Assembly (NCBI RefSeq): GCF_002113885.1
Contig: NW_018407357.1
Span: 792,591-856,590, forward strand
Source of the DNA: Mizuhopecten yessoensis
Taxonomy: Eukaryota
DNA length: 64,000 nt
Direction of reading: 5' to 3'
The position numbers and the translations under genes were made by a program. The notes below the pieces were generated by a model. The model saw nothing but the letters and a program-made list of their open reading frames with translations, searched no databases and was not told the DNA's origin. Shown here in pieces: positions 21,738-60,069 of the stretch (positions are counted from its first letter, which is position 1; every line of letters starts with the position of its first letter).

Positions 21738-22075
21738 TTTTATCCGTCCGTCGTAAACTTTTGTTTGTCCGGCAATCTCCTCCTACATTTTTCGACCGAT
21801 CTCTTTGAAACTTGGTATACATTATAATCATAATATGAAGTTGTGTCTCCCTCAAAAGAATTTTGATTCAACAATTTTTGCAAACGTAATTGCCCTTTGT
21901 TCACTTCAGTATTAGATTTTTGTCCGGAGATTTTCTCCTACATTTTTTATAGCATGTCAGCTAACCACTCTTATAATGATGCAGAGATATATTATTTCAA
22001 TGTAAGAAAGTATATAACACTATAATTATGGCATTCGAGGGACATATATTGTTCCGCCCCGCGGTACTCTTGTTG
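21738..22075. mobile_element. Helentron-type non-autonomous element (HINE-like)
   Basis: tttttat...gtccgtc start, internal repeated tttgtccgg..tctcctacatttt, ends ctcttgtt. Confidence 0.5.
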
Positions 22076-25729: not shown

Positions 25730-26320
25730 CTAGTCTGCTTCCTTTTGTGAAGGCCAGTGCGGGGTGTGTCTGCTTCCTTTTGTGAAGGTCAGTGTGGGGT
25801 ATGTCTGCTTCCTTTTGTGAAGGCCAGTGTGGGGTATGTCTGCTTCGTTTTGTGAAGGCTAGTGTTAGGCTAGTCTGCTTCCTTTTGTGAAGGTCAGTGT
25901 GGGGTATGTCTGCTTCGTTTTGTGAAGGCCAGTGTGGGGCTTATCTGCTTCCTTTTGTGAAGGCAAGTGTGGGGTATGTCTGCTTCGTTTTGTGAAGGCC
26001 AGTGTGGGGTTTGTCTGCTTCCTTTTGTGAAGGTCAGTGTGGGGTATGTCTGCTTCCGTTTGTGAAGGCCAGTGTGGGGCATATCTGCTTCCTTTTGTGA
26101 AGGCCAGTGTGGGGTATGTCGGCTTCCTTTTGTGAAGGCCAGTGTTGGGTATGTCTGCTTTCTTTTGTGAAGGCCAGTGTGGGGTATTTTTGCTTCCTTT
26201 TGTGAAGGCCAGTGTTGGGTATGTCTGCTTCCTTTTGTGAAGGCCAGTGTGGGGTATGTCTGCTTCCGTTTGTGAAGGCCAGTGTGGGGTATGTCTGCTT
26301 CCTTTTGTGAAGGCTAGTGT
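25730..26320. repeat. 35-bp satellite (tgtgaaggccagtgtggggtatgtctgcttccttt), grading into diverged variants to ~26840
   Basis: tgtgaagg at 25781, 25816, 25851... Confidence 0.94.
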
Positions 26321-26889
26321 CAGGCCAGCCTAACATTCATTTTGTGTATGTTAGTCTGGAGTCAGCCTGCTTCCCGTTGTGTATGTTAGTGTGGGGCCAA
26401 CCTGCTCCCTGTTGTGCATGTTAGTGTGGGGCCTGCCTGCTTCCTGTTGTGTATGCTATTGTGGAGCCAGCCTGCTTCCTGTTGTGTATGTTAGGGTGGA
26501 GCCTGCCTGCTTCCTGTTGTGTATGTTGGTGTGGGGCCACAAAATGAAGCAGACAGGCTCCACAATAACATACACAACAGGAAGCAGGCAGGCTCCACAC
26601 TAACATACACAACATGAAGTAGGCAGGCTTCACACTGGCCTGCTTCTTTTACTGTTGGGCCAGTGTGTTGCCAGTCTGCTTATTGGGGCCAGTATGTGGC
26701 CAGCCTGCTTCCTTTTGTGTTTGGACATTGTTGGACTTGCCTGCTTTCTTTCGTGTAGGGCAAGTGTGGGACCAGCCTTCTTCCTTCTGTGTGGGACATT
26801 TAGGGCCAACCTGCATACTTTTGTGTGGGGCGAGTGTGTGGCCAGCGACGATAACTATACGTAAGAGTTACATCCCTTCGACCGCTATT

Positions 26890-29800: not shown

Positions 29801-30113
29801 GCAGGACGGTCATATGCCCTGACTGGTAATTCAGCACACTTTATGTAGAACCAGTATGTGCACTCTTGTAACTGGTCTATAGATGGCAGTAATGACGCCT
29901 CTGTGGCGCTGAGTACTGTTCACCTGCAGTCTTGGACAGAGAATGGATAAAACAAGTTTTTCTCATCTGGGACGATCTGTCTGCCAATTATCACACAATA
30001 CATATTCGCTACAGTCGTCAAGTTGAAAATTGTCCAAGGTAAAAACTGCCTCTTTCGGATAAAAACTGGTTAAAATGCATAAAAACGTCACAGCCGACAG
30101 AAAGACGGACGTA
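26890..30113 (-). mobile_element. Degenerate CR1/L2-group LINE (PHD-like remnant, AP endonuclease, reverse transcriptase), frameshifted
   Basis: EN motifs ILFIGETKL, LVAGDLNI, PTCF, LSDWH. RT motifs AILMDLSKAFDCLPH, VPQGSILGPLLFNIFI, YADD. C-terminal YGLKSF...VWNSLP...WDG. Split across at least 7 ORF fragments. Confidence 0.93.
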
Positions 30114-30209
30114 CCCACGAAATGATAGTTATGTGACTGCCATATTATGTGACGTTTTTTCTGAAAATTGTGTGACCATATAACTGGTTCTAACGAATTG
30201 ACAGTCATG

Positions 30210-30830
30210 TGACACTGTATGTCCACAATTTATGTGACTCTTTCAATGTCCGTAACTTGTGTGACAATATGTCCACAATTTATGTGACTTTTTCCATGTC
30301 CGTAACTTGTGTGAAACTGTGTCCACAATTTATGTGACTTTTTCAATGTCCCTAACTTGTGTGACAATATGTCCACAATTTATGTGACTTTTTCCATGTC
30401 CGTAACTTGTGTGAAACTGTGTCCACAATTTATGTGACTTTTTCAATGTCCGTAACTTGTGTGACAATATGTCCACAATTTATGTGACTTTTTCAATGTC
30501 CGTAACTTGTGTGACACTGTGTCCACAATTTATGTGACTTTTTCAATGTCCCTAACTTGTGTGACAATATGTCCACAATTTATGTGACTCTTTCCATGTC
30601 CGTAATTTGTGTGACAATATGTCCACAATTTATGTGACTTTTTCAATGTCCGTAACTTGTGTTACAACATGTTCACAATTTATGTGACTTTTTCAATGTC
30701 CGTAACTTGTGTGACAATATGTCCACAATTTATGTGACTTTTTCAATGTCCGTAACTTTCGTGACAATATGTCAACAATTTATGTGACTTTTTCAATGTT
30801 CGTAACTTGTGTGAAACCATGTCTAAAAAT
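30210..30830. repeat. 50-bp subterminal tandem array (gtccacaatttatgtgactttttcaatgtccgtaacttgtgtgacaatat), ~12 copies, decaying to ~31100
   Basis: gtccacaatt at 30221, 30271, 30321...; each unit carries two TGTGAC motifs also found in the TIR. Confidence 0.95.
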
Positions 30831-32680
30831 GTTGTGATTAGTCATGTCCATAAAATATGTGACTCTTTAATGTCCGTATTTTGTGATAACATGTTCATTA
30901 AGTTATGTGACTACATGTATGTACAACTATGTCCATAATGTTGTGTGCCACCTTTTGTCAATAATTTAATGTCTCTTTATGTCCACAATCTGTGAGACTG
31001 TAAATAATTTGTGCATCACTATATGGCCTAAATATTCCCAAAACCTTGTGGGACTGTCTACAATGCTGTATCATTTTATAGAGCTATAATTTTTGTGACC
31101 CATTTTTTCCCCCATTTCTTACTAGTAAATTAAATATTGATCAACTTCATACACGTTGACATATTTATTTACTGCACGTTGACTCATTGTTAATGTCAAG
31201 AATTGCAAAGTTTCCAATGTCAAGACTTTTAAAAGATTTACATTAGCATATTCTGGACATTTTCTTATTCCAGTATTACACTGATTCTTGATCAGGTGGC
31301 AAACAATTGATACATCGTATACTAACCCTGAGACCATCTTTATTGTTATTATCCTGCAATTATTTATTCTACAGAACCTTAACAAAAACAGGACAAATGG
31401 TACATTGTACTTGCAAGCTTTTTATTGTGCAAATTTTGAGGGACATGAATAGGCATGGGCCTATTGCTGGATAACTATAGTATCCGTTCAAGGTCTATTG
31501 GCCAATTAAAGTAGTCTTCTGAGAGACACACATATAGGATGCCGCAGCCATCTTGTTTTTCTCTTTTTATCACACAGATTATATCTGTATACATGTGGGA
31601 GGCAATAATGTGAATGTTTTAAAAAATGACAAAAGCAAAAAATCAATTGTAATTCTTCTACAATTTGTCTTCTATAAAACATGAACCAAAACACTTTTCT
31701 AATTGATTCATTGTTGTTAAATTGTGCAATGCATTATTTCTATTATCATATGCTATTTGGAGCATAATCATGTCATTAAAATTAAGTAATCCAGCAGTAC
31801 CAGGCATTGCAGGATAGTCCTGGACAGCACTGGCAAGCTGTATGTGGCGAAACCAGGCTGTAACTAATACCATCCTGGAAATGGCAGCCACATTTCCTAC
31901 AAAAACTCAAGGAATTTTGGAAATGCACATACAATTGGGACACCATGAAATGTTCCTCTATATAATGCAATCTGCATTAAGAAATTCTGTTTCTTTTGAG
32001 AATTGTTCCAAACAGAATTTAATTCAGATTATGACTCTTTAACATGTACAGACAACACTCTCAACATCTTCAAGCAAACAGTATATGTTGCCATTCAAAC
32101 GATAAAAGCCCAGCAAAATCTGCTGTGTTATTATAATTGGTAACCATTAAGAAGTTATACTTATACAGTAACAACAAGAAATATAGGAATTTATGGAAAA
32201 GGAAATAAAATAAAAAATTAGTCACTACTGCGACATAATGTAAAATCATGTATCTCTTTCATACTAAATGAATGTTAATTATTGTGAAATGCTTTGTATA
32301 GTCAATCAACAGATATATATATATATATGTATATCATCCTTTTACTCCAAATCCAACTCCATAACATCTTTCTGAAATCAAATCTGGTCAATCTACTGCA
32401 TCATCATAACTTGTTGAAATGGAAGCAATATACATAATACTCGAACAGTAAATACAGGATCAAATAAAAAGGTAGAAACAGATCCTTGGGAAAAAGGACA
32501 TCAAATTACCGATTCAGTTACTTCTTGTAACAAAATAAAAATTATGCAAGAAACCATGGATCTTGTGAAAAGCATTAGTTTCTTTTACAGAGAGGTTTTC
32601 AATCAATTTGAAATGGTTTGTTTAGTCCATCAACACAGATATGCAACAATCCCTTCTGCTCAGAGCAGTTATACTTCAGC

Positions 32681-33362
32681 AACAAGATATCCAAGAGGAA
32701 TCTTGGCACCCACCATCGTTTGCTCTTCAATTATTCCTGGATATTTTCCCTTATTTTCTCTTCTTTCCTCTGTTTTCTGTCTACGAAATAGCAATAATAA
32801 CCTTAAAATGTCAAATCCAGGATGGTTCCCTGCTGATTTTTTCTGATCAGTCTTCAAAATCAAAAGGACACAACTAGGGACCAAAGGAAATCTACAAATT
32901 GAACTTGAAAAAGATCCATCTTGTACTTCAAGAAATAGTGATAACAAACTTTCATTGTCAAATCTAAAATATCTGTCTGTTGCCCATATTATTGTTTTAT
33001 AGATATCAAAATCTAAGATGCCGTCTATCGGTCTTATTGTTTTCCAGATCAATCCAAAAAGGTACAATGCACAACTAGGGACCAAGAGGAACCTACATAT
33101 AAAATCTGAGAATGACCCACAGAAATAGCGATAACAAATTCATCAATGAAAATCCAAGATGACTGTCGGCCATATTGTTTTCTTTAGCAAAAAAAGGACC
33201 ACGCACAACTAGGAATCACGGGAAACCTGCATATGAAATTTGAGAATGGTCCTTTAATAACTCAAGAAATAGCAATAACAAGAACTGTGTAAGGACGGAT
33301 GACGGACCACAGACGATGGGCGATTTGAATAGTCCACCATCTGATGATGGTGGGCTAATAAA
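32681..33362. mobile_element. Helentron-type non-autonomous element (HINE-like); shorter relative at 38024-38382
   Basis: Both start acaaga.atcc.agagg.atcttgg..c..accatcgtttg, share caaatc.aggatggttccctgct, have a ggacgga tract and end in the hairpin ccat.tgatgatg..gggctaa. Confidence 0.75.
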
Positions 33363-33405
33363 CATCACTGTCAAATAGTCTTTGTATTTTCCAGAAATTA
33401 TGGAA

Positions 33406-36400
33406 TTACTTTGAGTGATTTATGTAGGATATTTTTTTGATGATAAGGTGGTTAGCTCTGAGGTGGAGAACACCATTGGCCTTTTCACTTTTCTTTTTCA
33501 TTTTTTCGATGACAGCTTGCCTGGGAGTTGTTTTTGTTTTTAGAAAATCACTGAAATACTCTTTCAACTCCTTCATTTCTGCAGCTGTCCACCGCTGGCG
33601 AGATACCCTTGGTGTTTTCTCTTTTGCTTCATCCAGTTCGTCTTCTTCCTCGTCTTTTTCCTCTGTGGCCTCTTCATTGGCTGCCTCTTCTGAATACATA
33701 CACTCCTCTGGATCCATGTTTTGTACTGGGATTGATCTAATAGATAGAATTCATACATTGATTTTTCATCTATTATATACATATTTCACAAGTATGGCAG
33801 ATTTTTTACATTTTCATAAATGCGAAGCACGAGTGAAAATATTTTTGAAATCTGCCATATGAGTCAAATATATCTGACATTTAAAGGGAAACCAGTGAAT
33901 TTTCTTTTTCTTACATTAAGGAAGAAAAAATAGAGGACTCAAATTTCAAACAAATCTGCTACAAACAAGGGCGAGGAACGTTGTTTTATTCCAGTCACTG
34001 CTAGAAATCCCTCTCAAACTGATACAAGAAAGTAATTAAATGAAAACCTGTAATGTATACCATATTTTTTTTTCGTGAAAAAAATGATGCAATGTTAGAT
34101 TAGAAATCTTATACCATCACCATGAGGTGATGAAATCAAATAGATATTTTCCTATATTTAATGTAATAAAATAATCATACCATAAAACAAGATACCTAGA
34201 CAGCAAATATCACAAAATGGCATTTTAGCATTATCACACTTGAATTTGATAAGGCAAGCTAAATACTCACAGGTGATCTGAAGAGTGGAGTTGGGTGTCC
34301 GCATCAGGCAACACAAGGTCTGTTATAGAAAGAAAACAAAATCAATGACAAAACTTCTACAGATGTTATTATTAGTTGATCCTCAGTCCTTCCAGTCTTC
34401 TAATGTTCTTTCCCTAATTATTCCAATAGAACAAAAAAGGTACAAAGTGCAAGAGTCAAGTTTCACGTCAATTTCTGAGGATAATCTGTTAAAAATTGTG
34501 CGGTTCAAAATAACAGCACTGGTATCTGACTTTAAATTATTTATTAGAAAGGTCATGAAACAGATCACCATTTAACTGTAGATCACACTTTTCCAATTAT
34601 TATGAATACTTTTTAAGTGCTCTACAAATCATTACCTCTAATGTCAAAATCATCTAGTTTCTGGCCGCGAAATTTGGATGTCAGGTTGAGATCTTGGATG
34701 AGTAGTATCTTGCTGACCTGGGTCTTTTCGACAAGCCCACTCAACTGTCGGTAATGTTCTTTGTGGACCTTTTTTGTATGCCCAAGATGACTGTACACCC
34801 ATTCAAGCTGATTTTTGTCCAAGTTCATCATCTAGAAAGTTCAAATTAATCAGTGCAAATATACAAAGCATCAACATCATTATTCCGTCTTAAACTTCTT
34901 AAGTTAAAAAAAAAAAAAATATTGTTGAAACTGATCTCATGAAATCAAATTCTATGATATTCTGTTTAACAGACAAGTAAATAAATTCAGAATAACATCG
35001 GTTAGGCCATAATAAATTAATTCCTAAATTCTCATCCAATTTTCTTCAAAATCAGGGCAAGGGGAGGGTTTTTGTTCGTTTTTCTAAGAATTTCTTATAT
35101 TCGTAAATACATGTATGTAAAAATTATGAAATAAAAGTATGTTCAGTGTCTGATTCCAGATTCTTTGTCCGGATGTTGGTTCCCTTATTATAAAACAAAC
35201 ATGGCCGACAGCATGTTTATCACACTGCAGCTACTGACTTTTTTGACAGATTAACTTCTTTACCATGATTCTTATGTGAAATAAAAAATATTGAATTGGC
35301 TACAAAGATTGCTACTTTGATGGTCATTATCACTTTCCATGTATTTATATGTTTAGATTTGTTTTACTCCCACTTTAGTCACGGTCAATCAACAACAAAA
35401 ATAGCGATGTTTTACCAGCATGAATAAAACAGAAGCAACTTAATTGAAATTATAATTTAATTATTCTGATGTTTGTTAGAAAATGGAAGTATTTCTCTTG
35501 TGACATGTCATTATTTTGAAAATATTAACAAAATGTATGATTGTGTATAAATGAGGAGATCAGTATTGTATTATAGTCGGTACATTTTCCCAACGAAATA
35601 AAAAAAAAATCCGGGCAGGCCAAAACAGTCAAGGTAGGTAGGCAGGGATGAGAATCTTGGAATTAATTTATTATGGTCTTGCACTCCTGTTGTAGTCCTT
35701 AGAGTTTGTGTCATTCTACAAAAGCATATCCATATTATTCGCTGTAATTAACTACATTGTGTTAATGTTTAACAGTAGAAAATATGTTACCTGAGTCAAG
35801 GTTGCCATGTACTTCCTCATGCTCACAGATGTGATTTTATGTGGTGCGCGTAGATCGAGTTCCCCACAAACAAATCTCAGCGACTCGTATGCCCTGGCAT
35901 AGTGATTCACTGTTAAATACATAAATATAAAAATTGATCCTACGTATTATTCACCTGTTATATCAATTGAAACAAGATTCATTTGTGAAACAATGCCCTG
36001 ACAAGTAACCTTTCACAAAGAATAGGCAAACAAGGCACAGGTTAATATAAATGTTGATGGAATATGACCAATATTAAATAATATCAGATCTTATTAAGAT
36101 AAAGCAATGTCATTTGATGGGATCTCTAAAACAGACAAGACAGACATGTACAGACCAAAAACAATCTGCCTCCTGATCTTCAATCTCAGAGGAGCATAAA
36201 AATTCTGAGCTTTACTTGCATATTTTTGAAGCATGCTACTACAAAAGTACTTCCAAAGGACCCTGGATTATGAACAACCATGGAGCAAGGAAAGCTTACA
36301 TATATGTATACAGTACATCCTACTTGTCATATCAATAATCAAAATCTAAGATAACAGAGTGTGAGGTCAAAATCCAAGGAAGATGTATCCATTACTTCTC

Positions 36401-39400
36401 CAATTGAAGTAACTCAACATGGCAGGAGGAAACACAGTCAAAGATAAACAATAATACATACATTTTTTATGTTGAAGTTTTAATTTTGCTTTCAGGTTTC
36501 ATTTATATCATTACCTGAATTTGGAAAAAGATACGGGTTTCCCTCCACAATGCCAGAACTTCGTCTACCCTTAACCGATGCCAGGAATGCCAGTGCTCTT
36601 TTGGCATCAGGTGGAATTATCACCGGTACAGGTCTTCCTCTCTTGAATGAACAATTTTGAAAAGGAATCATTTAAAATTATGACATCCAGATTATCAAGA
36701 TTGTTATGATGCAGTGTTAGAAAAGTGTGTATAAATTTCATGTCAAATACGCAATTAGCATTTAATATTAGTTATATTTATGACTTAGCAGATAAATTAT
36801 TTGCTCCAATTTCATGCTTCAAGTTGTGTTTCTCTTGGAATGAATAATTTGAAACTTTTCACATCAATATGGTTTTATGTTCTGAATTACATTAATATTG
36901 AGAACTATATATTGTACTGACCAAAGTCTTCCAATGCTGATAGATGTAAATAAACCTTCACCTTCATCAACTCATATAAACTTAATTGTCATTTTTTTTT
37001 ATTCTGCTGATTAATGATTAATTTTGATTGACTGTCTTCATATTTCTTTCATTTTCCTTCCTTATTACAGTATTTATATCCTATCACTTCCATTAACATC
37101 AATAGTATGAACATCTGGGCCAGTATTCCTGAATCTGTACTCGTGCTTATAAGCACAGATTTCATGATCAAATGAATAATTTTGTTACTCACCAAAGTAT
37201 TGTAAAATAATGCAAGTATATATTGCATACATTGAACAGTATATACAAGTGTAGGGTTTGGGCTCTTCAGAATATTTCCCAAAAATTGATATGATTTGCT
37301 TTATTATCAATTCGAAGCAGAAACAAGATATATGCTTAATAATGAGAATGAATTCATGAATACAATCCCTGTTTTAGAATTCATATTTATATCTTTTGCA
37401 TGCATATACTAGTTAGTATATCCATTCCGGACTCAAAACCTTGCTAAGTATAACACATGTTATTACATTTGCCAACTTTTTCTAACCACCATTTTACATG
37501 ATCCCCAACAACATTTTGGAAATAAATCAATAAATCCATGTACTCCTTTGACAATCGGTCTGCCATCAACAGTTCGATAGAATATCCATCTTGCTACATA
37601 AATGTTAACCTTGTATTTTACCTTTCCTCGCACTCGAAGGAATTCCTGCGATTCTAGCAAATGCTTTTCTACAGGTGAAAGGTCAGACTCGAGGGACTCA
37701 TCAATACCATCAGAGGGCTTGCTTCTTGAGGCATAACACTGAAGCCTGTGTAAATAAAACATTATTTTGTATATTAACATTACCTATCAACTCCATTAAT
37801 GTAACAAGAGGCCCCAACAGCTTTAAAAGTCACCCCAAGTACATACAGTAAACCCCCACATAACTTTCAAAGCAATACAATGTATTTCAAACAACTTTCA
37901 GACTGAATCAAATACAATGCATTTGCAGATAATCAATCTACTACAGTTGGACCTCATAAGTGGAAACAGGAAACATGAACATATTCACAGCAAATTTTAA
38001 AAACGATGATTAATAATGAACATACAAGAGATCCCAGAGGGATCTTGGTGCCGACCATCGTTTGATCTTTATTTGTTCTTTAAAAACTTAGACCTTTTTC
38101 CTTCTATTCTCTTCTTTCCTTGTTTTTCCTCTACGATATAGAAATAATCATTAAACTGTCAAATCTAGGATGGTTCCCTGCTCGTTTGTTTTTCTTTCAG
38201 TGTCCAAATCAAAAGGGCACATTTTAAGACTAAGAGGAACCTACATATGAAATTTGAGAATGAACCATCCAGTACCTTTCAAGAAATAGTGGTACAAAAA
38301 TTGTTCAAGGATGGACAGACAACAGAGACCACAGCCGAAGGGGGATTTGAATACCCCTCCATTTGATGATGAGGGCTAAAAATCAATACAACAGCATACA
38401 TTTTAAAGTCAGAAATAGCCATGTGGAATTATCACTCACTTGATGGTTTCAACCTCTCCTGATCTCCGCTTGTTGTAAAGCAGTATTCTGGCTTGGCATA
38501 GGGCAACTAATCTCCTGAAATTATCTGCAACAAGTTCTAGATGGTCAAGTTCTTTCCTCAGGTATTTTGTGATTTGTTCAATGTCCTTCGGAGAGGGAAG
38601 TTCATTTTTATATTCATATTTCCTACGTGCCAACACCAATCGAGCAAACCTTGTTACTCTTTCCTCCCATTCCAAGTCCATCAGTGCTAGCAATGTCTTG
38701 CAATTTTTTGCTTCCTCGTCATCTGCAGATCCATTTTTTACTATCATAGCCCACTTACTATTGATAAGACGATGCAGGTCGTATTTTAACATAATAGCAT
38801 TGCTAGGGGCAAGCAAATCATCCTCGTCATCTGCATTAGGAATTGCACATTTTATTGCAGCTAAAACAATATCATCAAAATGGTTGGGCTTCAGATAATG
38901 CCATAACCCTTTGGAATCATCTGCTTTTGGGACAAGTGCCTCACACTTAACATCCCCGTCTCCCTCATCATCATCTCCTTCTTCTAGATAAGTCTTTTCA
39001 TCCTTGTTAGACTTTGTATCTCTAAGGGCAAGGAGAAGCCTTGCACATAGCCTCATTCTGGAACTTGCATAATACTTTCTTTTTTCAACATTTCCTCTGT
39101 TACGCCTTAACCAACTTTCTCCCAGTGCCATTACAAGTGGATCATTTTGGGCAGTTTGGGACATCACATCCCTGGTCATAATTGGCAGAACTTCTTTACT
39201 CATGAGTGATGATGGTTCATCCTTGAGATGGCCAGCTAAAACCTGAGCTTGAAACACCAGGTCTTTCCTTCGCATCTTTACAGTGTTTTTTTCATGGCTT
39301 TGGCAATGTCTATAATGAAGCTTTAAATGATCCAACATAACCCATTCCCTACAATTAGGGCAGGGACCATAATCTGTGACATCAAACTTCCCCTTTGGCC

Positions 39401-40083
39401 GCCTGGCCAGGATAATTTCTCCCTGTTTCTTTTCCACGCATTTCCTGTTATGACGGTCGTCTCCGAACTTTCTCAATGATGTAAAATTAGGCTGATCACT
39501 TTTGAGAATGTCTTTAACCATGTCTTGGTTTCTGTGTGTTTTCAAATGTTCCTTTATGTGTAGCACAACTTTCTCACAAAAGTAGCAAGCATGACGGTTG
39601 TCATAAATTCTTACACCTCTACTCTGACCTTGATTCATTTTGTTTTTTTTTATTTTGTATGTTTTAATGTAAAGGGAGCTACTATTAATATCCCGGGTAA
39701 TGTTATCGTCTTCCAAATCAGAGCTTGAATCTTCAGGTCGACATCTCTTCTTAGAACCTGTATCACATATGCCATCTTCATGCTGATCAGCGCCAGGGCC
39801 TCTATGCCTTTTCTCCTTTGAATCTCTGTCACTGCTGTTGTTGTCATCTTCATGCTGATCAGAGCCAGGACCTCTATGTCTTCTCTTCTTTGAATCTCTG
39901 TCACTGCTGTTGTTGTCATCCTCATACTGATCAGAGCCAAGACCTCTATGTCTTCTCTCCTTTGAATCTCTGTCACTGCTGTTGTTGTCATCCTCATACT
40001 GATCAGAGTCACGACCTCTATGCCTTCTCTCCTTTGAATCTCTGTCACTGCTGTTGTTGTCATCCTCATACTGATCAGAGTCA
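33406..40083 (-). CDS. Spliced tyrosine recombinase (Crypton-like YR) with N-terminal zinc fingers and C-terminal Myb/SANT-like tail; 5' part runs into the N-gap
   Basis: Phase-consistent GT-AG exons: >40083-38440, 37745-37622, 36641-36515, 35909-35791, 34831-34636, 34319-34271, 33736-33406 (stop). Motifs: CYFC..HLKTH, CPNC..HYRHC, LYNKRRSGE (catalytic R), VRGK|RGRPVPV (K), ITSVSMRKYMAT (xxxR), HLGHTKKVHKEHY (H, nucleophile Y), RQRWTAAEMKELKEYF. No stops across the seven exons. Confidence 0.9.
35003..35680. mobile_element. Intronic MITE with ~35-bp TIRs
   Basis: taggccataataaattaattcctaaattctcatcc vs ggatgagaatcttggaattaatttattatggtctt. Confidence 0.7.
39770..40083 (-). repeat. 72-bp coding tandem repeat (EDDNNSSDRDSKERRHRGxGSDQY), at least 4 copies, in frame with the YR exon
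   Basis: 72-nt periodicity; this frame is open and continues into LEDDNITRDIN of ORF 38436-39716. Confidence 0.85.
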
Positions 40084-40683
40084 NNNNNNNNNNNNNNNNN
40101 NNNNNNNNNNNNNNNNNNNNNNNNNNNNNNNNNNNNNNNNNNNNNNNNNNNNNNNNNNNNNNNNNNNNNNNNNNNNNNNNNNNNNNNNNNNNNNNNNNNN
40201 NNNNNNNNNNNNNNNNNNNNNNNNNNNNNNNNNNNNNNNNNNNNNNNNNNNNNNNNNNNNNNNNNNNNNNNNNNNNNNNNNNNNNNNNNNNNNNNNNNNN
40301 NNNNNNNNNNNNNNNNNNNNNNNNNNNNNNNNNCCCCCCCCCCCCGGCGGAAAGTGTGGGACCTCGTCTTAACTAGAGGGAAGGGAGAATCGCCGGATTA
40401 CTGACCTGACGCATTTGCCTGTGTTTGGTTATACATACTTTCTTTGCCAGAAAGAAAATTATCAAAGACAGGAAATTGATTGGAAAAAAAATCTAAATAG
40501 AAATAAGTCTGGAAGACAAATCATGACAGTGCTCATGAATGTTTCCTTACACTTTAATTGTACGCATTTTAAGTAAACTGTAATCGGTGAAATAGCCATC
40601 ATCTCTACTAGGCGATAGTTGTCATTTTTTATTATACATTCACACAAAGGGTATGTATGGTTACAATGTACTTGGTGTTTGAT

Positions 40684-43600
40684 CTACATAAATTGTTTAA
40701 CCGTTTCACCACTGCAGATCATAATGTATTCATTCACATCAAACTTCTTGAAACGTACATGTATATATTCAGTAATTGGTTGAACAGCAAAACATGTGAG
40801 CGAATCAATGATCCATTCCCTGCAAACAGCATTGATACTGTATTCTTCATAGACCTCTGAAAAAGTAATGGCAAAAGTAAAAAATGAGCATTGAAAATTG
40901 TAATAACAGTTAAAAACTAATTTATTTTGTAAGTTTTTGATAAAATTTAAATGTTGGTATAATTATTCAAATTGAATTTCTTCAGTGTTGAAAATGGACA
41001 AAATATATTGTTAAGTTTCATAATCTTTTACAAGTCAATACTATAGCATAATTTGATCCCTCCCAATGGAATTGGTTAGTTTCTGAAAATTGTCAAATTA
41101 AAATCTATAAGCATAGCAAAATACAATAAATACAATCTCTTACTTTTCACTGCATTTCTTTCTCCTGGAGATAAAACATTCATTTCTTCACCCTCATGGC
41201 TATAGCATGTGACAATCACAGAATCATGACACACATCTGATGCACCAATGACTGTACCTCCACAAGCCATAATCAACTTTGTTATGTCATCTGAAATATC
41301 AATGAACAGCATGAGTACCATTACTCCATTAGTACTTTTTACTAATTTTCATATACCTAATATTGTTTAAATAGAATTCCATGGAAGTGGATGTGTCGCC
41401 TGCAAAGCAAGCTGGGAGATTATGAAGAAAATGATAAAATTCTCATCATAGTGATAACTATATGTCACCTTTTGCAGGCGACACAAAAATGAGTCACACA
41501 ATGTTATATATCCAAGCATTTTCATAATTTATTTTAGATTTTTCCAGGTACTGTATTGAAAGAAGTTCGAACCAAGGCAACTATATTATCAGAAATTGGA
41601 AGACAAATCAGATCTATACGTGTGAATTATTTGATGAAATTAGTAATAGACTTCCAGGTCATCCTAAAATATATAAAGTTTGTCAAATTAATGTCGGTGG
41701 CATTCTGATCTCTTCAACAGCATTTATGGTCAGGTTGTAAATGAAAAATGTTATCTAAAAGTGGAGGACCTAAAAACTAGTACAAATCATAGTCGTTTTA
41801 TCACACTACATACTGTTAAATGTACTCAAAGATTATAATATGAATACTGAGACTAATTCATTTTTACTAATATCTTTATCCTTACCTTTTGTTAGATCTT
41901 CAGCCTGTCCAATGAGGTGGATATTGAAACCTTTTAGTAGCAGACTAGACTTTGTCCGTGATAGATAGGGCCCATTATGCATCTCAATGGTGCCAGTATC
42001 ACCAATAACCTCGTAGTTTTTCTGCCAAGAAAAATAGCTAGGTTAAAAACAAAATGAAACCACTACTTTAATGCTTAATTCCATTCTGACAAATGCTATT
42101 GTGATAAAAAGTATTTTTCTTGGAATTTTCAATCTTCATGTACATATTTATTTATAACCTCTTAGGCTAAACCACAAAAGATAACAAGTTCATTTCATTC
42201 ATGAATCTGTAGCAAGCAAGTGATGGCTTTCATATATATAGGCAACAGAGAAATGTGTAGCATTAATGAGTTATCTTACCTCTGATTGGCGAATTCCTTT
42301 ACTTCCTGAATCTCTTATCCATTGGAGATTTACAATAAAAACATGGTGTGCAATTGCTTGTAAAAATTTCAGACTTCTGTCACACATTCTGCATTCTTCA
42401 GGTTCTACAATTCAAGGGTGAATTGACAGTTTAATATCATCATGTTAAACACGCATTTTAAAAAAAAATTCTCTCACAAATTTAGTTAGTTATGCAGATT
42501 AAAACTGAATTGACTATTCAATGGTGTAATGATCCAACATAATTAGAATTTTAATATTGCTCTGAAGTTTCTAGATTTAAATCAAGTATTCAACTTATTG
42601 ACAAAATGTCATTTATCCATTTCATACCTGTTTTTATGACAAGATGGGTGATTTTTGGGTGAAAGGAATGAGAAAATCCCCAACCGAACGTTCGGCACAC
42701 ATTTTTGACATCTTCCTGCAGTTATGACAAAAACACCTATATCAGTAGACAGCACAATGTATGCATATATCAATATACTACCACAGCTTTCTGATCACGT
42801 TGAAAAAAAATACTCTCAAGAATGTCGCTATTTTTTATTTAAAAAAGTGCAAAAGACAAAAATCAAGGCATTACACAAAAAACAGATGCTTATCAGACTT
42901 CATACTTGAAACAAAAACTAATGTACATGTACATGTAATACAATATTATCATGTCAACATGTTCACATGAACCATATATCAGGTTGACAAAATTAGCTTT
43001 ATTAATAGAAATTCACTTAAAAAAATCATAATCACTCAATATTATAACCTCCAAACATAATGGCAGAAAGGTCTTGCCTTATTTCTTTGTTTTTGCTTGC
43101 TACAAAGGCTATATTTACTTGATTTTATCACAAGCTTGTTCAAACCTGTTGTGATTGGTTCAGTCCAGAAGTCAAAATTATGGTAGGGGACTGGACCTCA
43201 GTGCCTGTGGTAGGCAACTGGTCCTCAGTGCCAATGGGAGGGGACTTGTCCTCGGTGCCTGTTGGAGGAGACTGGTCCTCATGATCAGTGCCTGTTGGAG
43301 GAGACTGGTCCTCAGTGCCTGTTGGAGGAGACTGGTCCTCATTGCCAATGGGAGGGGACTGGTCCCCAGTGCCTGTTGGAGGAGACTGGTCCTCAGTGCC
43401 TGTTGGAGGAGACTGGTCCTCATTGCCTGTTGGAGGAGACTGGTCCCCAGTGCCTGTTGGAGGAAACTGGTCCTCATTGCCAATGGGAGGGGACTGGTCC
43501 CCAGTGCCTGTTGGATGAGACTGGTCCTCAGTGCCTGTGGTAGGAAACTGGTCCTCAGTGCCTGTTTGAGGGGACTGGTCCTCAGTGCCTGTGGTAGGAG

Positions 43601-44216
43601 ACTGGTCCTCAGTGCCTGTTGGATGAGACTGGTCCTCAATGCCTGTTGGAGGGGACTGGTCCTCAGTGCCTGTTGGATGAGACTGGTCCTCAATGCCTGT
43701 TGGAGGGGACTGGTCCTCATTGCCAATGGGAGGGGACTGATCCTTGGCGAAAGGATGGTGAGACTGACATTCTGTGGATAGTCAATAAATAGTTTATTAT
43801 TATTACATTCTTAACGGCCCGTCAATACATAAAAGGTCATTAGGACCATCAAATAGGGTACAACAAAAAGACTTAAAAGGAAATCACATCAAATAACTAA
43901 AGACTAACAAAACACTTTTTCCATGTAATCCAGAATTTTGTGTATTTAAGTTTCAAAAAGAACTTGTCACATTACGATAAAAATGTTCTCAAATAGACAG
44001 GAAGTCGATGAAGTCCAACTCTTAGCTGGAATATTTATTGTATGGAATAAAGATGACTCCTGCTCTCAGTTCAAAGTTTTCAAATGTACTTTGAATAAAA
44101 TGGTTCTTGGACTTTGGCAGTTCAGTAAACAAGACCACTGAAGTTAAATGTACCTTTGAAACAGGATAGGTCCTCCTCAAACAAGGACTTCAAATGTTTT
44201 CTCTTCTCAAGATATT
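40684..44216 (-). CDS. Spliced BRCA1-like tandem BRCT protein region (separate gene or N-terminal part of the YR protein)
   Basis: Phase-consistent exons 44216-44154, 43771-43146, 42715-42628, 42404-42280, 42021-41886, 41290-41144, 40856-(40684 stop or earlier donor). Translation: IILTSGLNQSQQ|EDVKNVCRTFGWGFSHSFHPKITHLVIKT|EPEECRMCDRSLKFLQAIAHHVFIVNLQWIRDS..SE|KNYEVIGDTGTIEMHNGPYLSR..LLKGFNIHLIG..LTK|DDITKLIMACGGTVI...AVCREWIIDSLTCFAVQPITEY. Confidence 0.85.
43185..43745 (-). repeat. 27-bp coding tandem repeat (EDQSPPTGT)x~20 inside exon 43771-43146
   Basis: Splice-phase-defined frame is open; the one indel (6 nt at ~43281) preserves frame. Confidence 0.85.
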
Positions 44217-46966
44217 CTGGAAGTGAAAATTGATTGATTTAGCATTTATTTCTTTAGTGAATAGAACTAGTTTGAAATGGGGCTTGTTAGTCCAATAAAC
44301 TAGGGTTTCACAATAGTATTTCATACCCAGTGTAGGATTAGAATAATTGCCCACTGTCTTTGTACTAATTGGGCTATTAATAAGGGAAAATCCTGTTGGT
44401 TGAAATTAAAGGGACATCACGTGAAAAGGCATTTTTTTTAATGAATGTATGTATTGTATGCACTTCCACTTATGTTACCTCGCTATCCCCATATTCATAG
44501 TCTGTTCCAAATGTCCAGTTTGACCACTTGAGTTGTTCGGGAAAGCCCTGCTAAAAATAGCGCCGATAACGTCACCTGACTAGGCAGTAAACACAAGTGG
44601 TGCGAGCGAGATGAAACAGTTTCCAAAGGGGCCCCCAGAGAGGGGCTGTCAGGACTTAGATAATCCATGGACTTAGATAATACGCTGTGGGCTATAACAA
44701 CTTCTTACCGCACTATGAAACCAAGTTATATGATTTCTAAGTCTGTATTCAAACTTATTGAACAGTAATTATTCATCATTAGAAGTTAATTGCACACTTG
44801 CCAATATTCAGAATTTAAATTTATTTAGCTTTAAACATAAATTTGTTGCCAATAAAATTAAACAAGGGATGGGGCACAAGTTTTTACAATTTATCACAGC
44901 CTTCTCCCGTCATACATTTACAATTAAATGTNNNNNNNNNNNNNNNNNNNNNNNNNNNNNNNNNNNNNNNNNNNNNNNNNNNNNNNNNNNNNNNNNNNNN
45001 NNNNNNNNNNNNNNNNNNNNNNNNNNNNNNNNNNNNNNNNNNNNNNNNNNNNNNNNNNNNNNNNNNNNNNNNNNNNNNNNNNNNNNNNNNNNNNNNNNNN
45101 NNNNNNNNNNNNNNNNNNNNNNNNNNNNNNNNNNNNNNNNNNNNNNNNNNNNNNNNNNNNNNNNNNNNNNNNNNNNNNNNNNNNNNNNNNNNNNNNNNNN
45201 NNNNNNNNNNNNNNNNNNNNNNNNNNNNNNNNNNNNNNNNNNNNNNNNNNNNNNNNNNNNNNNNNNNNNNNNNNNNNNNNNNNNNNNNNNNNNNNNNNNN
45301 NNNNNNNNNNNNNNNNNNNNNNNNNNNNNNNNNNNNNNNNNNNNNNNNNNNNNNNNNNNNNNNNNNNNNNNNNNNNNNNNNNNNNNNNNNNNNNNNNNNN
45401 NNNNNNNNNNNNNNNNNNNNNNNNNNNNNNNNNNNNNNNNNNNNNNNNNNNNNNNNNNNNNNNNNNNNNNNNNNNNNNNNNNNNNNNNNNNNNNNNNNNN
45501 NNNNNNNNNNNNNNNNNNNNNNNNNNNNNNNNNNNNNNNNNNNNNNNNNNNNNNNNNNNNNNNNNNNNNNNNNNNNNNNNNNNNNNNNNNNNNNNNNNNN
45601 NNNNNNNNNNNNNNNNNNNNNNNNNNNNNNNNNNNNNNNNNNNNNNNNNNNNNNNNNNNNNNNNNNNNNNNNNNNNNNNNNNNNNNNNNNNNNNNNNNNN
45701 NNNNNNNNNNNNNNNNNNNNNNNNNNNNNNNNNNNNNNNNNNNNNNNNNATTACATTTTTTCCAAATCAAATTCATCACTGCCAATTAATCTACTCTTGT
45801 ACTGAATTAACACAGCTAGGGCATTCAATTAAATCCTTGAGAGTATAGTTTTGACTCTTCACAAAAATGACATTTGATTCCTGCGTCTGAAGGGAAATGT
45901 TGATTTAACATACATTTGGATCCTGTATTACCCATGAAATTACAAAATCTTAAGGGTCAAATGCATGCACAGTAACACTAGAACAAAAAACACGGTAAAA
46001 CAGAAAACTATTTAAATCAAACAATGAACAAAACATTGAAAACAATTCATTAAAGCCTCTCTATGTTTTTGTAACATAAAACTTATGACAAAATTACCAA
46101 TATATGATAAATGATAGAATAATAACCCTAATGACGATATGATATGAGAATAAATATCATAGTTTTCCATAATTGCAATTAAGACTGGGAAACTCCACTC
46201 TGATAACAGGAATCCACATTTGCAGTGCACAGCTAGCTCTATATGTAAATTACCCGTAGAAACTATGTCAAACATTCATGTGCAGATGGGTTTGATTTGA
46301 AGAATGACGGACTTGCGATCAAAGCCACAACTCAGACGAACAAAATTGGACGTCCTTACTGATGCTGCGAAGGCAAAGAAAACAGAATGGACACAAGCAC
46401 AGCATTATCTGCGAATTACATAATCGATGTGGGTCCATTGGACAAAATTAAAGGAAGAAGTTAATGTGAAAAGCCACGATGAATTGGCGGCGACACTTCT
46501 GGACATTTGTAAACAAACACCATGTGCAGTTCGCTATTTACTTTCAACTTTCTCTCGTAATAGCGTACGTTTTGTAAACTTTTTAATGAAGCGCACAATT
46601 TTGTTTAAGCAATAAGTTTATTATTTTATAATAAACCTTTGTGTCCTGTACTTTACATTGTACAATAACGAATAACTCACCGCCTGCTCAAAACTTCTCT
46701 CCCTGTCATCTATGTCTTTCTGTTTACCATCACGGGATGTAAAATCGGCGAGCACATATTACGTATTTTTAGATACACAAATTGACCAGGTCTATTTTTA
46801 GATATTTCTTACATATTTTACTTATTGATAACTACGTAACAGTTCAGGTTTGAGGGAAATTAAAATATGAAAACTCCATTGAGGATGATGAAGTTTTGTT
46901 TGAAAAAGTTTTATTTGTACATGCATAAATAAAAACATAGAGAGGCTTTAACAAAATTATATATAC

Positions 46967-47435
46967 TTAGGCCTATGTGTTCCCAATCGTGGTCCTTGAG
47001 CTCCACGTCAGTTATTTTAATGGTGTATCTAGAGTTTCAATATACATAACATAAAACTTCAACATATCAGGATAGGCTCACCCACAAAGATCTGACCTCA
47101 ATGGGGAGCCATGGAAGTAAGTTTAATTAAGCAATGAAAATATTGTAATTCATATGGCACTCCAGTTTTTCCTATGCTTGAACAAAATCAATTCACCAGA
47201 AAAAAAGATGAAATCTAATTAGTTATTCCCTTTAAAAGTTAATATATCAAGCAAATAAAAGGTTTAAAATGAAACTTTATGTTTTAATAAATACTTACGT
47301 TGTATCATCAGATTGAGAGTACACATTCACCATATCATCTTCGTACCCCATAAATTCCACTGGCCACCTAATATTATTTGGTAACCCTTTGAGTTTCACC
47401 CACACATACGTCCGCTTAGTGTTTGCGGCTGCCAT
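46967..47435 (-). CDS. Putative first coding exons with PWWP-like motif
   Basis: Exon 47435-47299: MAAANTKRTYVWVKLKGLPNNIRWPVEFMGYEDDMVNVYSQSDDT followed by gtaagt. Phase-compatible exon 47028-46967: TYTIKITDVELKDHDWEHIGL. Resembles the PWWP pattern VWAKLKGYPWWP. Link to downstream exons is unresolved (gap). Confidence 0.55.
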
Positions 47436-47617
47436 GATTGCACTCTGCAATGTCAAAGGTACTGAGATAAGTGAGAGAAGTACAAAGGTGACTTATATAT
47501 CCTTATTGCCCACCATTTGCATAATTACATTCAAACCTTGTTTCAAACCTTTCTTAATTAACCTCAATTTTGGTCAAACATGCAATAACTGAAGATTCAT
47601 TAATGATCTTAAAATTT

Positions 47618-48010
47618 TATATCAGAAAATCTGGCAGAAATCACGACCAAAAGTAATGAGACTAATTTGTCCATAATTATGTGGTACTATCGAAGGTCCT
47701 TTCATGGTTATCAAATTGGTCTATATCAGAAAATCTGGCAGAAATCACGACCAAAAATAATGTGACTAAATTGTCCATAATTATGTGGTACTATCGAAGG
47801 TCCTTTCATGGTCATCATTTTGTACTATATCAGAAAATCTGGCAGAAATCACGACCAACAATAATGTGACTAATTTGTCCATAATTATGTGACACTATTG
47901 AAAGTCCTTTCACGATGAATAAATTGAATACAGTACCGGGTACAATTGTACTCGAAAATCTGGCAGAAATCCGACCAAAAATAATGTGACTTATTTGTCT
48001 ATAATTATAC
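47618..48010. repeat. ~105-bp tandem repeat, ~4 copies, containing taatgtgac/ttatgtg motifs
   Basis: gaaaatctggcagaaatc.cgaccaa recurs at ~47625, 47729, 47833, 47954. Confidence 0.85.
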
Positions 48011-48950
48011 CACTGAATGGTTTTTTCAGTCACTTGAGTCATGAAATATATGGCATATCATAACATTGTATCAGAAATTAAGAGAGAAATTAAAGCAAAA
48101 AGATAATAAGACTATGTATACTATGTCCATTATTATAATAGGCGACTACATTGAAAAGTCTGTCATGGTCCCAAATTTTTTTTCTTCGCATTTTGCGATA
48201 TGGCGACTGTTGAACCCTGTTTTTCAAAAAATCAGGCCAAAAATAATGTACACAACTGATATTAATATATATATATAATCACATAACTAATGTGACATTT
48301 TTGAAGGTTATACTGGAAAAAAATCAGAAAACTGGACAAATTATAGTAAAAAGTAATGACTTTTACCAATAATCATGTCCATAATATACACATGTACAAT
48401 TCATAATATTTGCCACTACTATCATTAAATAATAGCACATATGATGATCAGAAAGCCTCTCCCCCCAAGCTAATAACTATTGACAATTTCACAAATTTTG
48501 AACATTATTATATATAGAAAGAAGCAGTGTTTTTGCTACCTTGAATTTACAGCAACCTATGCCTTATTGAATTAGGGCAAACAAAATCACTGATAAGAGA
48601 CTTTATGCATTTCCTTTACAATGATAGTTTGAAGTTTAAATTCATTTAGACATCTTTCATTGATGTATCTTAATTATACTAGAATGTCTTGAAGCAACTG
48701 GAAAATAGATTATATAAGAAGTTATGTAGGGACAGGGGAATTACCATGCTATAATTAGGTGCAACATAAGTTCATACCTCCAACTCACTTCTTCGGACAA
48801 TTTCGGCTACAAATCAGCTGCTTTTTGTATAAATATGCACACCAGTCACAACATATACATGTATACTAGTGTGCTTGGAGTTGATATATTATATAAAGTC
48901 TCAAATATACAAAAAATAAAAGATTTTTCATGAATCGAATCGATACTCAC

Positions 48951-49225
48951 CTTTAAAATAGATAGGAAGGACATCATATATTTATTCAATTTCTCCATCA
49001 ATGATATTAATAACTTTATATTTGAATCCAAGATTTGTTGAGTAAGTCGAAAATCCAAGGATGGCATTGGAATCAAAGAAATACACACATTTTTTGACAT
49101 AGTCTTCGATGCAATCAAGTCTTTTAAAATAGCAGTAGTTTAGTGCACTGACCAATTCTGAAAGTTTTTGAAACTCGCAATATCCTATACATTGTGTTGG
49201 TAGATTCTGTTCCGCCATAACGAAT
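48951..49225 (-). pseudogene. Exon-like segment of unknown product with an in-frame stop
   Basis: tttatag acceptor, ATG at 49218, 78 codons, TAA, then aag|gtgagt donor at 48951. Confidence 0.3.
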
Positions 49226-50335
49226 CTATAAAATTGGTAACAATGAGACTAATAAAGGAAGAACATTTGTTTTCGCCTGTAAACCTCTGAAATTAAACCT
49301 AAATGAACAATTTGTGGAAGTAAGTTGTAAGCCTTGTCTGAGAATCCTTGTGCGATCACAATGCAGAGGTGTAAACCTTTTTTAGGACTCTAGCCAAAAG
49401 GCCCTAGTTATTCACTAGCCCTATATTAATTAAATTCTGCAAGCACAAAATTTATTGAAAGTATCAATTCAGCTCACACTGATTGATTGATTGTATTGCT
49501 AAACGTCCCATTGAAAATTACTGATTTACGGCCAACAGCTCAGATACCACAGTATATTACTGTAAGTCAATCACAAATGGACAAATCGATGAAATGCTTT
49601 TACTTTAAAATTACAACTTTATTTAAAATTTAATGATGAATTGCAAGTTTAAATTAATGTCTTTAAATTTCATAAATCTTAAAAAAGAACATATTTTTCA
49701 CTGCTCCTTACAATCAGTCCGTATATTTTTTTCATTATTAGAAAGCCGCCTTAGTATAGAAAGCATAAAAAAAACATGGCGGACAAGCTGGACAGATTGA
49801 TGCAAATTTTTGGGATTATCTGCACTTTAATTTCTGTACCCCATATGCTTATGTCAAATGAAAGAGAATGATTTCAAATACGTAGGGCCATTTTTGGGTC
49901 AGTATTGACTTTCAATGTTATTTATGCTGCGAAAAGTCTATCGTCGGTTCCAGCGTGAATCCATGTGTTTTGTTAGATATTGCCGTAATTTATCTATAGG
50001 TTTAAGATGTTAATTGGTCAATATATTGATGATAAGATTGATTAAAAGAATCTAGGAGTTATATTATCATAACAGTGATGTCATGAACGCTAAGCTCTCA
50101 AACAGTATCCAAACGAAAAACCAAAAGGCCTATCATTTTCGAAGTCCGAAAAGTTTCTGATGACGGCCCTCTGATGAAATCACTTCGTTCGCCTTTTGGC
50201 GATTTGATGTAAATCTTGATCACCGTCAACATCGCGAAGGTGCTTAATATAATCACATTATTTAAGGTATCTTTCGTCACATAATTAAAGGTTCAATCGG
50301 GTGTTACTTCATAAAAAAAATACAGCTAAACTTAC

Positions 50336-50400
50336 CTTTGCATCTCATCTGCCGCCCGCCTGAAACTTGTGCGCAGGTTCCGGAAGTGCTATATAAAATC
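50336..50400 (-). promoter_or_regulatory. Candidate inward-facing promoter and leader exon near the right TIR
   Basis: TATA-like tract (50391-50398), ETS-like ccggaagt, short GC-rich stretch, then consensus donor aag|gtaagt at 50336. Confidence 0.4.
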
Positions 50401-50684
50401 CGCGTCAAGAGAACCCTTGACACAAGAGGCGGCTAACCAAATACGGGAGTACGGTAAATGGAACAAGGGAGATAACCCCTACAATATGCGATACGGACGT
50501 CTAAAATATGGGGAAAAAATGTCTGTAAAATTATGTGACGGATCTCTGATTTTTGTGTGTGTCACATAACAACCATTTCTACGCACTTTAACACTAATAT
50601 CCTATGTGACTGTCACACAATTCTGAAAGGTCACATAACTGTGATATGGGCACAAATTCGGTCACATTACTACTATTTCGTGTG

Positions 50685-50720
50685 AACATCTGAACTTGCC
50701 GCCATCTTGCCGGGTATCCC
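50685..50720 (-). mobile_element. Probable detached 5' tip of the LINE
   Basis: Minus strand reads ggcaagatggcggc (YY1-type motif common at LINE 5' ends), immediately outside the right TIR and co-oriented with the LINE. Confidence 0.5.
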
Positions 50721-52154: not shown

Positions 52155-52687
52155 CGAACTTTTGGTAAAAATGACACCCCAATGATCATATATATACGAG
52201 AACGGCGGAAAGCTCTCGATGTCGAAAATTCGACCCACCTAACGTTCTTGCATCAAAACAACATTTCTAGTTGATGTGAGGAAAAATGTTTAGTACTGTT
52301 CGAGAGATGGATAGTATTTCTTTTAAAAACCTCCTATACGCACGTTAAATGTATTCTCCTTCCGCGGACATTATCTCGATTTCCTCCAAAAACAAACGTC
52401 ATTTCCGAGTATCAAAGTTTTTCACAGTCATCGTGCCACTTTTTTGTATATTAATGAAGTTGACCTCAGCCACGTGCCGAACCCGTAGTGTGATTGGTTG
52501 GAAGCGTAGGCATTTTTTCGCTTAACAAACCAACACTGCATGTTTCGGCACGAGGCTGACGTCAACCTCATTAATATACAAAAAGTGGCACGATGACTGC
52601 GAAAAAATTTGAAACTCGGAAATGGCGTGTGTTAGGTAGGCGGACTTTTCGACACCGAGATTGGGGTGTCATTTTTACCAAAAGTCG
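52155..52687. mobile_element. Foldback/palindromic element
   Basis: Outer arms cttttggtaaaaatgacaccccaat / attggggtgtcatttttaccaaaag; inner ~110-bp arms around a short loop at ~52510. Confidence 0.8.
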
Positions 52688-59985: not shown

Positions 59986-60069
59986 TAAAAACATAAAAAA
60001 AAATCGTATAATAATGTCGTGAAGGGCTACAATTCCTTCTATCGAAATTACAATTCTCTACCAACTTAC

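What the first reader, a model, noticed from the sequence alone, without database searches (positions are those of the whole stretch)
30116..50682. Candidate giant animal transposon: CACTA-like ends with a tyrosine recombinase and cargo
Seen: 22-bp imperfect TIRs starting with CAC, motif arrays at both ends, a 20.6-kb span, LINE-like DNA on both flanks, and the traced exon models all on one strand. The only recombinase visible is a YR. Known: CAC/CCC termini with subterminal repeats typify CMC/EnSpm DDE elements, whereas canonical Cryptons are a few kb and lack TIRs; large cargo-carrying YR elements are best known from fungi (Starships). Inference: this is either a YR-mobilised, cargo-carrying TIR element, or an EnSpm-type element that carries a YR as accessory protein/resolvase and has lost its DDE gene. 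I cannot tell from sequence alone whether it is already catalogued.
Basis: partly seen in the sequence, partly recalled or inferred. Interest (0 to 1): 0.92.

Follow-up and report, generated by a model that had tools for sequence, protein, structure and literature searches.

The report
Large recombinase-driven jumping gene in scallop
This 20-kb scallop DNA transposon most likely moves with a cut-and-rejoin enzyme (a tyrosine recombinase) instead of a CACTA transposase; its relatives land in short GTCC repeats, and its gene has picked up a piece of the host BRCA1 gene, so the unproven 'circle' model for such animal transposons can now be tested directly.

Summary
Real mobile element, but not CACTA. 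The genome is the scallop Mizuhopecten yessoensis. A second copy (93-99% identical) shares the exact 3' end with another flank, is collinear across both gaps, and is broken; this copy's sequenced recombinase exons are open. Best boundaries are 30115-50685, between 2-bp AC/GT direct repeats. Gap-free complete relatives in Pecten maximus (20.5 kb) and a ribbon worm (10.9 kb) have the same end plan and sit in (GTCC)n tracts, which are restored by removing the element plus one GT. Joined ends would give inverted arms around an 8-bp spacer, as in a tyrosine-recombinase core site. No DDE gene was found in any complete element. The 'cargo' is mostly one intron-rich gene: PWWP-like, repeats, zinc finger, recombinase, Myb-like; the BRCA1-type BRCT pair is a local capture. 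Likeliest mechanism: excision as a circle, reinsertion at GT cores (inferred, 0.8). It works like a Crypton or Starship. Closest named group is Repbase CryptonV (microsatellite-targeting); sequence membership could not be tested. The scan's look-ups showed this element only on this stretch.

The parts
30115..50685 (-). whole element, 20,571 bp including estimated gaps
30113..30114 (+). 2-bp direct repeat AC (GT in gene orientation) at the 3' junction
   Evidence: same GT after the 3' ends of L006, L008, L009, L011
50686..50687 (+). 2-bp direct repeat AC (GT in gene orientation) at the 5' junction
   Evidence: same GT before the 5' ends of L007, L009, L011
30117..30138 (+). 3' inverted arm, 2 nt inside the GT; proposed recombinase core-binding arm
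   Evidence: role inferred
50660..50681 (-). 5' inverted arm, 4 nt inside the GT; 18/22 match to the 3' arm
   Evidence: role inferred
30130..30911 (+). subterminal TGTGAC motif cluster with a 50-bp tandem array (30218-30814)
50532..50666 (.). subterminal TGTGAC motifs in both orientations
50336..50395 (-). putative promoter and non-coding first exon (TATA-like box, ETS-like CTTCCGG, donor at 50335)
   Evidence: sequence only; similar layout near the 5' ends of L007, L009, L011
47299..47444 (-). PWWP-like exon (ATG at 47435)
   Evidence: matches L002, L003, P0058; the P0058 piece also matches L009, L011; PWWP by ESM features 0.87, a lead
44932..45749 (.). assembly gap, not filled; may hold the missing PWWP linker exon
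44154..44216 (-). exon for the helix after the PWWP-like domain
43146..43771 (-). exon built of a 27-bp repeat (Pro/Thr/Asp-rich linker)
40759..42715 (-). five exons of a BRCA1-type tandem BRCT (42715-42628, 42404-42280, 42021-41886, 41290-41144, 40856-40759 or on to a stop near 40684); captured host DNA
   Evidence: Pfam BRCT E 3.8e-14; BRCA1 E 5e-13 in PDB; found in no other locus than the second copy
40084..40333 (.). assembly gap, not filled; holds the acceptor of the large recombinase exon
38440..40082 (-). large exon: 72-bp repeat, C2H2-like zinc finger, core-binding region, catalytic Arg392 (P0001 numbering)
34271..37745 (-). five exons (37745-37622, 36641-36515, 35909-35791, 34831-34636, 34319-34271) with Lys441, Arg515, His541, Tyr550
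33406..33736 (-). last exon: acidic linker and three-helix Myb/homeodomain-like domain
27387..29707 (-). left flank, outside the element: degenerate LINE endonuclease and reverse transcriptase
   Evidence: multi-copy in reads

Best explanation
An autonomous-type DNA transposon moved by its own tyrosine recombinase. Shown: it is multi-copy with sharp ends; a GT repeat borders both ends; relatives sit in (GTCC)n tracts; the enzyme has the recombinase fold and keeps its catalytic residues. Inferred: recombinase molecules bind the two inverted arms, the Myb-like tail or zinc finger binds the subterminal motifs to pair the ends, strand exchange at the GT cores releases a circle whose joint is two inverted arms around an 8-bp spacer and leaves one GT behind, and the circle reinserts at another GT in a GTCC-like site. 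The PWWP-like domain probably reads chromatin to steer insertion or expression. The BRCA1-type BRCT pair was captured with introns into this gene in the scallop lineage and may tie the enzyme to DNA-damage phosphoproteins (speculative).
For: Second copy with identical 3' end and different flank. Three complete elements from two phyla share 5' GT|TC(A/T)CAC(G/A)AA and 3' TT(C/T)GTNN|GT, with a 4-nt versus 2-nt offset to the arms; the 5' pattern occurs only three times in 701 kb held, each at an end, but it was derived from these three. Removing element plus one GT restores the tract in L009 and L011. A second subfamily (37% identical) with other terminal letters also starts right after GTCC-GT, fixed by an uninterrupted paralogous flank, and ends before GT-ACGTCC. 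Fold matches XerA, XerH, Cre. R392, K441, R515, H541, Y550 kept in 66-69 of 71 homologues. Exons of the two scallop copies differ by 0.4%, the rest by 1.9%, p 6e-8. No DDE gene inside or recurring beside 89 loci. LINE-flank contigs in two runs go on past 30106 with other letters.
Against: No circle, excision or empty allele was read directly; one search did not print the letters past 30106, and those contigs leave the window 7 bp before the predicted junction. A 2-bp repeat is short and easy to get by chance next to GTCC. The first His of the H-x-x-R motif is Thr or Val across the family. This copy sits in a GTCC-like LINE stretch, not a pure tract. Ends were not found in L001, L002, L004, L005, L010 (loci reach only 10 kb). 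Small-exon DDE genes could be missed, and the gaps are unread.
Confidence: 0.8

Rival explanations
1. A non-autonomous EnSpm/CMC-type element moved in trans by a DDE transposase; the recombinase is a passenger or a resolvase.
For: CAC..GGG-like letters near the ends and subterminal repeat arrays resemble CMC ends (family traits from own knowledge). An earlier scan note reports intact CACTA elements in this genome (s1-519434; not checked).
Against: With C..G ends no duplication in three of three elements; relatives end CTC..CAG and CTC..TAG; asymmetric offset and fixed GT core; no DDE gene in any complete element or recurring neighbour; recombinase residues conserved.
Confidence: 0.1
2. A cut-down relic of a large integrating DNA virus of the nimavirus kind: integrase and attachment ends kept, viral genes lost.
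For: Endogenous nimaviruses insert into telomere repeats or 28S rDNA with a distinct recombinase family that has a C2H2 finger, and some are multi-exon (PMC10871703).
Against: No viral genes in three complete elements; no relative in IMG/VR and no close match in BFVD; intron positions shared across molluscs and a ribbon worm. Kinship to nimavirus enzymes was not tested by sequence.
Confidence: 0.05
3. Chance pairing of two small elements around a host gene, or a scaffold joined wrongly at a gap.
For: Two unread gaps; the 5' end of the second copy was out of reach; the genome is rich in repeats.
Against: Second copy collinear from 47067 to the 3' terminus; gap-free relatives show the same ends, gene order and introns; three near-identical proteins at separate loci of P. 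maximus.
Confidence: 0.03

Closest known systems
CryptonV (Kapitonov and Jurka 2012, Repbase Reports 12:2034; known here only through PMC8869645, PMC4455052, PMC5753468)
   Same: Animal DNA transposon with a tyrosine recombinase; target-specific, some families in microsatellites.
   Different: Described from cnidarians. Its size, ends, domains and target motif were not in any paper I could read, so the inverted arms, GT core, PWWP/Myb fusion and BRCT capture cannot be compared.
Cryptons A, I, F, S (PMC3212892; PMC13465315)
   Same: Single recombinase gene, no reverse transcriptase, short terminal direct repeats (F, S), proposed circular intermediate.
   Different: They lack inverted repeats; animal A and I have no terminal repeats and no C-terminal domain; CryptonA is DUF3504, matched by none of 71 homologues here; repeats are 4-6 bp, here 2 bp.
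Starships (PMC10104507; PMC11162782)
   Same: Large recombinase-moved elements with a direct repeat from target homology, occasional inverted repeats and target preference.
   Different: Fungal, DUF3435 captain (no match in 71 homologues), many separate cargo genes, usually far larger; here one gene and one captured exon block.
Nimavirus recombinases (PMC10871703)
   Same: Animal-associated recombinases with a C2H2 finger that insert into simple repeats or rDNA.
   Different: Carried by virus genomes of hundreds of kb; other targets; N-terminal SAM-like instead of PWWP-like domain; sequence kinship untested.
EnSpm/CACTA (CMC) transposons
   Same: Short imperfect inverted repeats with subterminal motif arrays; CAC letters near the ends.
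   Different: No DDE transposase, no duplication outside C..G ends, asymmetric ends, fixed target core.
Tn916/Tn1549 conjugative transposons (own knowledge; fold match 6en0)
   Same: Recombinase acts on inverted ends around a short spacer in a circular intermediate; extra binding sites lie inside the ends.
   Different: Bacterial, conjugative, variable coupling sequences; no chromatin domains or introns.

Membership tests
EnSpm/CACTA (CMC) | DDE transposase in autonomous members | tested here: not met
   None in the window element, L009 or L011, none recurring in 89 loci; gaps unread and small exons could be missed
EnSpm/CACTA (CMC) | 2-3-bp target-site duplication directly outside symmetric CAC/CCC termini | tested here: not met
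   Flanks TT versus TA, TC, TC; relatives end CTC..CAG, CTC..TAG
EnSpm/CACTA (CMC) | short TIR with subterminal repeats | tested here: met
Crypton (broad sense) | DNA element whose only enzyme is a tyrosine recombinase, no RT | tested here: met
   the RT in L009 belongs to a nested LINE on the other strand
Crypton (broad sense) | 4-6-bp terminal direct repeats and no TIR (PMC3212892) | tested here: not met
   2-bp GT repeat plus 15-18/22 inverted arms
Crypton (broad sense) | circular intermediate (proposed, never shown: PMC13565253) | not testable with these tools
   joint predicted
CryptonA | DUF3504 recombinase without C-terminal domain | tested here: not met
   0 of 71 hit PF12012; Myb-like tail present
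CryptonV | target-specific insertion, some families in microsatellites | tested here: met
   L007, L008, L009, L011 in (GTCC)n tracts; window and L006 in GTCC-like repeats
CryptonV | recombinase clusters with Repbase CryptonV sequences; same termini | not testable with these tools
   Repbase and Dfam not available; primary description not held; Kojima 2020 review not held
Starship | DUF3435 captain | tested here: not met
   0 of 71 hit PF11917
Starship | terminal direct repeat, optional asymmetric TIR | tested here: met
Starship | several intact cargo genes | tested here: not met
   one gene plus captured BRCT exons
Endogenous nimavirus | nimaviral core genes inside the element | tested here: not met
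   no further genes in 11-20 kb elements
Endogenous nimavirus | recombinase of the nimaviral family | not testable with these tools
   no sequences in the supplements; not among BFVD or IMG/VR hits

The most novel reading that the evidence does not exclude
These are not CryptonV but an unnamed, animal-wide superfamily of 10-20-kb recombinase transposons that work like bacterial integrative elements (core arms, 8-bp spacer, inner binding arrays), use an integrase fused to exchangeable chromatin and repair domains (PWWP-like, SET, BRCT), and explain hundreds of 'uncharacterized' animal genes.
Probability: 0.3. Interest if true: 0.85.

Novelty: new variant of a known kind. Interest (0 to 1): 0.68.

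Why it matters
How Crypton-type transposons move has been proposed but never shown (PMC13565253). Here the ends predict an exact circle joint and an exact empty site, so one PCR and one cell assay can test the model in animals. The recombinase family is large (635 clusters at E 1e-30; named hits in bivalves, snails, a ribbon worm, a brittle star and beetles; chordate clusters with SET) yet has no Pfam model of its own and is annotated as uncharacterized, so these elements may be missed or misfiled as CACTA. A sequence-preferring recombinase that naturally moves 20 kb in animal cells could be useful for large-cargo insertion. The captured BRCA1-type BRCT pair is an unusual case of a repair-signalling module inside a transposon enzyme gene.

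Tried and rejected
Reading CAC at 30116 as the terminus: rejected, the second copy shares further letters and no duplication results. Reading C..G ends (30114-50684): no duplication in three elements. CCCAC at L009 22169 as its 3' end: an inner motif; the outer end is at 22254. Apparent boundaries in worm metagenome loci (L015/L029, L019/L020) are tails of other repeats. Pfam and PDB sequence searches missed the recombinase; the fold search found it. IMG/VR: no relative. The Mya arenaria locus was not on record. No clear ends in L001, L002, L004, L005, L010. Read laying on 28200-30215 (2,016 letters) did not print the key loose ends and laid nothing on the element's last 100 bp. Ten paper searches found no description of this end plan or domain set; subscription papers and Repbase Reports are not held, so this is weak evidence of novelty.
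Full report
Identity and observation. The large reading frame at 38439-39716 is identical to KP79_PYT07144 of the scallop Mizuhopecten yessoensis. The inverted repeat is there: 18 of 22 letters match between 30116 and 50682, at the edge of what shuffled end regions give. TGTGAC motifs cluster at both ends, with a 50-bp array at 30218-30814. The left flank is a decayed LINE; the right flank has no LINE frame.

It is a mobile unit. A second scallop copy (L006, scaffold NEDP02004995.1) is 93-99% identical over the main blocks and collinear from 47067 down to the terminus, where it shares every letter to 30113 and then enters a different satellite. It has two 1-bp frameshifts in recombinase exons and lacks about 600 bp of the BRCT block; the window copy's sequenced exons are open. 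Coding exons of the two copies differ by 9 in 2,234 bases, the rest by 119 in about 6,370, which points to selection on the gene while the family was moving. In two sequencing runs, contigs of the flanking LINE run on past 30106 for 54 and 80 letters unlike the element; the letters were not shown, so this only fits an uninterrupted site.

Gaps. They were not filled. Both copies have gaps at the same two places and stay collinear across them. Two gap-free relatives have the same order of parts and the same intron positions. Continuity is therefore likely; frame across the gaps is unproven, since the acceptor of the large exon lies in the first gap and a PWWP linker exon is missing from sequenced DNA.

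The gene. The exons read PWWP-like domain, helix, 27-bp repeat, five BRCT exons, 72-bp repeat, C2H2-like finger, recombinase, acidic linker, Myb-like tail. RefSeq joins repeat, BRCT and recombinase in one 1,266-residue model, but its join at the gap is a prediction. The Crassostrea gigas protein P0058 holds the PWWP-like part, repeats and recombinase in one chain, and a PWWP-like exon lies upstream on the same strand in L002, L003, L009 and L011. The domain name rests on a language-model score of 0.87. The catalytic region folds with pLDDT 91.6 and matches XerA, XerH and Cre. R392, K441, R515, H541 and Y550 are kept in 66-69 of 71 homologues; the first His of H-x-x-R is Thr or Val. Six of 71 hit Phage_integrase, none DUF3504 or DUF3435. 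The tail is a three-helix Myb/homeodomain-type fold (best Z 6.5 with Tbf1, a modest score; Pfam Myb in 4 of 40). The BRCT pair is BRCA1-like (E 5e-13) and is found only in the two scallop copies; its exon sizes agree with BRCA1's as I recall them, which suggests capture at DNA level. Other family members carry SET instead.

The ends. Pecten maximus L009 (1702-22254, 20,553 bp, enlarged by a nested LINE) and Tubulanus polymorphus L011 (4595-15530, 10,936 bp) are complete. Both split a (GTCC)n tract. All three elements read GT, then TC(A/T)C, then an arm starting AC(G/A)AA at the 5' end, and the inverse arm, two letters and GT at the 3' end. Removing the element and one GT restores the tract in L009 and L011. 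Joining the ends over one GT gives two inverted arms around an 8-bp spacer, the layout of a recombinase core site (PMC3212892 gives 11-13-bp arms and 6-8-bp spacers). A more distant P. maximus subfamily has other terminal letters yet starts right after GTCC-GT, fixed by a paralogous flank whose tract is whole, and ends before GT-ACGTCC. With CACTA-style C..G ends, no element has a duplication. In window terms the element is 30115-50685 between AC at 30113-30114 and 50686-50687.

No DDE partner. The three complete elements share only this gene; unassigned frames in the window give no Pfam hit; in 89 loci the only recurring neighbours are LINE frames. Short contigs and small exons limit this test.

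Mechanism. Most likely (0.8) the recombinase pairs the two ends, helped by the subterminal arrays, exchanges strands at the GT cores, releases a circle and reinserts it at a GT in a GTCC-like site. Mobility, ends, target preference and enzyme class are shown by comparison; the circle, the binding roles and any role of PWWP or BRCT are inferred. Rivals: trans-mobilised CMC element (0.1), viral relic (0.05), chance or mis-assembly (0.03).

Known or new. It works like a Crypton or a Starship but fails CryptonA, Starship and CACTA membership tests. CryptonV is described as target-specific and microsatellite-inserting (PMC8869645) and is the likeliest home; I put this at about 0.6 and could not test it. 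Nimavirus recombinases are the other lead (PMC10871703). I found no paper that describes these ends or this domain set. Verdict: new variant of a known kind, interest 0.68.

Noticed in passing
window 56972-58075 (-): Intact single-exon 367-residue frame that looks like an alpha-1,3-fucosyltransferase (YKFYLSFENS motif; own knowledge).
   Followed up: no
window 11505-16187, 25733-26846, 58923-61911: Long tandem arrays (18-bp x about 257; 35-bp with an inverted arm; 52-bp).
   Followed up: no
window 32680-33366 and 38020-38385: Two nested copies of a mollusc repeat with a GTCC tract, the same family that serves as target in L009; the element carries copies of its family's own kind of target.
   Followed up: partly
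window 47618-47912: 104-bp x 2.8 repeat carrying the ATGTGAC motif inside the element, possibly an inner binding array or a nested element end.
   Followed up: no
window 35004-35679 and 52391-52633: Small inverted-repeat pairs that look like MITEs.
   Followed up: no
window 50688-50720: CAAGATGGCGG motif on the minus strand just outside the 5' end; may be the start of the LINE whose body lies on the left flank.
   Followed up: partly
L007:3164-4280 and L007:18140-19194: The 5' flank of a truncated P. maximus copy recurs (92%) after the element with an intact GTCC tract; a helicase-C gene lies at 21125-21928.
   Followed up: partly
L009:4600-22254 inner motifs at 22169; L011:4732: Second, inner copies of the terminal arm lie 85-135 bp inside one end in both relatives.
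   Followed up: partly
L004 (beetle Phaedon cochleariae) 8750-9450: Dense GGAATATTC motif arrays upstream of a distant recombinase relative; ends not found.
   Followed up: partly
protein P0028: A family member filed under a bacterial MAG (Candidatus Thiodiazotropha); probably host-clam DNA in the bin.
   Followed up: no
proteins P0116, P0183, P0099: Family members fused to SET (brittle star), beta-flower and fibronectin III domains; some may be annotation joins.
   Followed up: no
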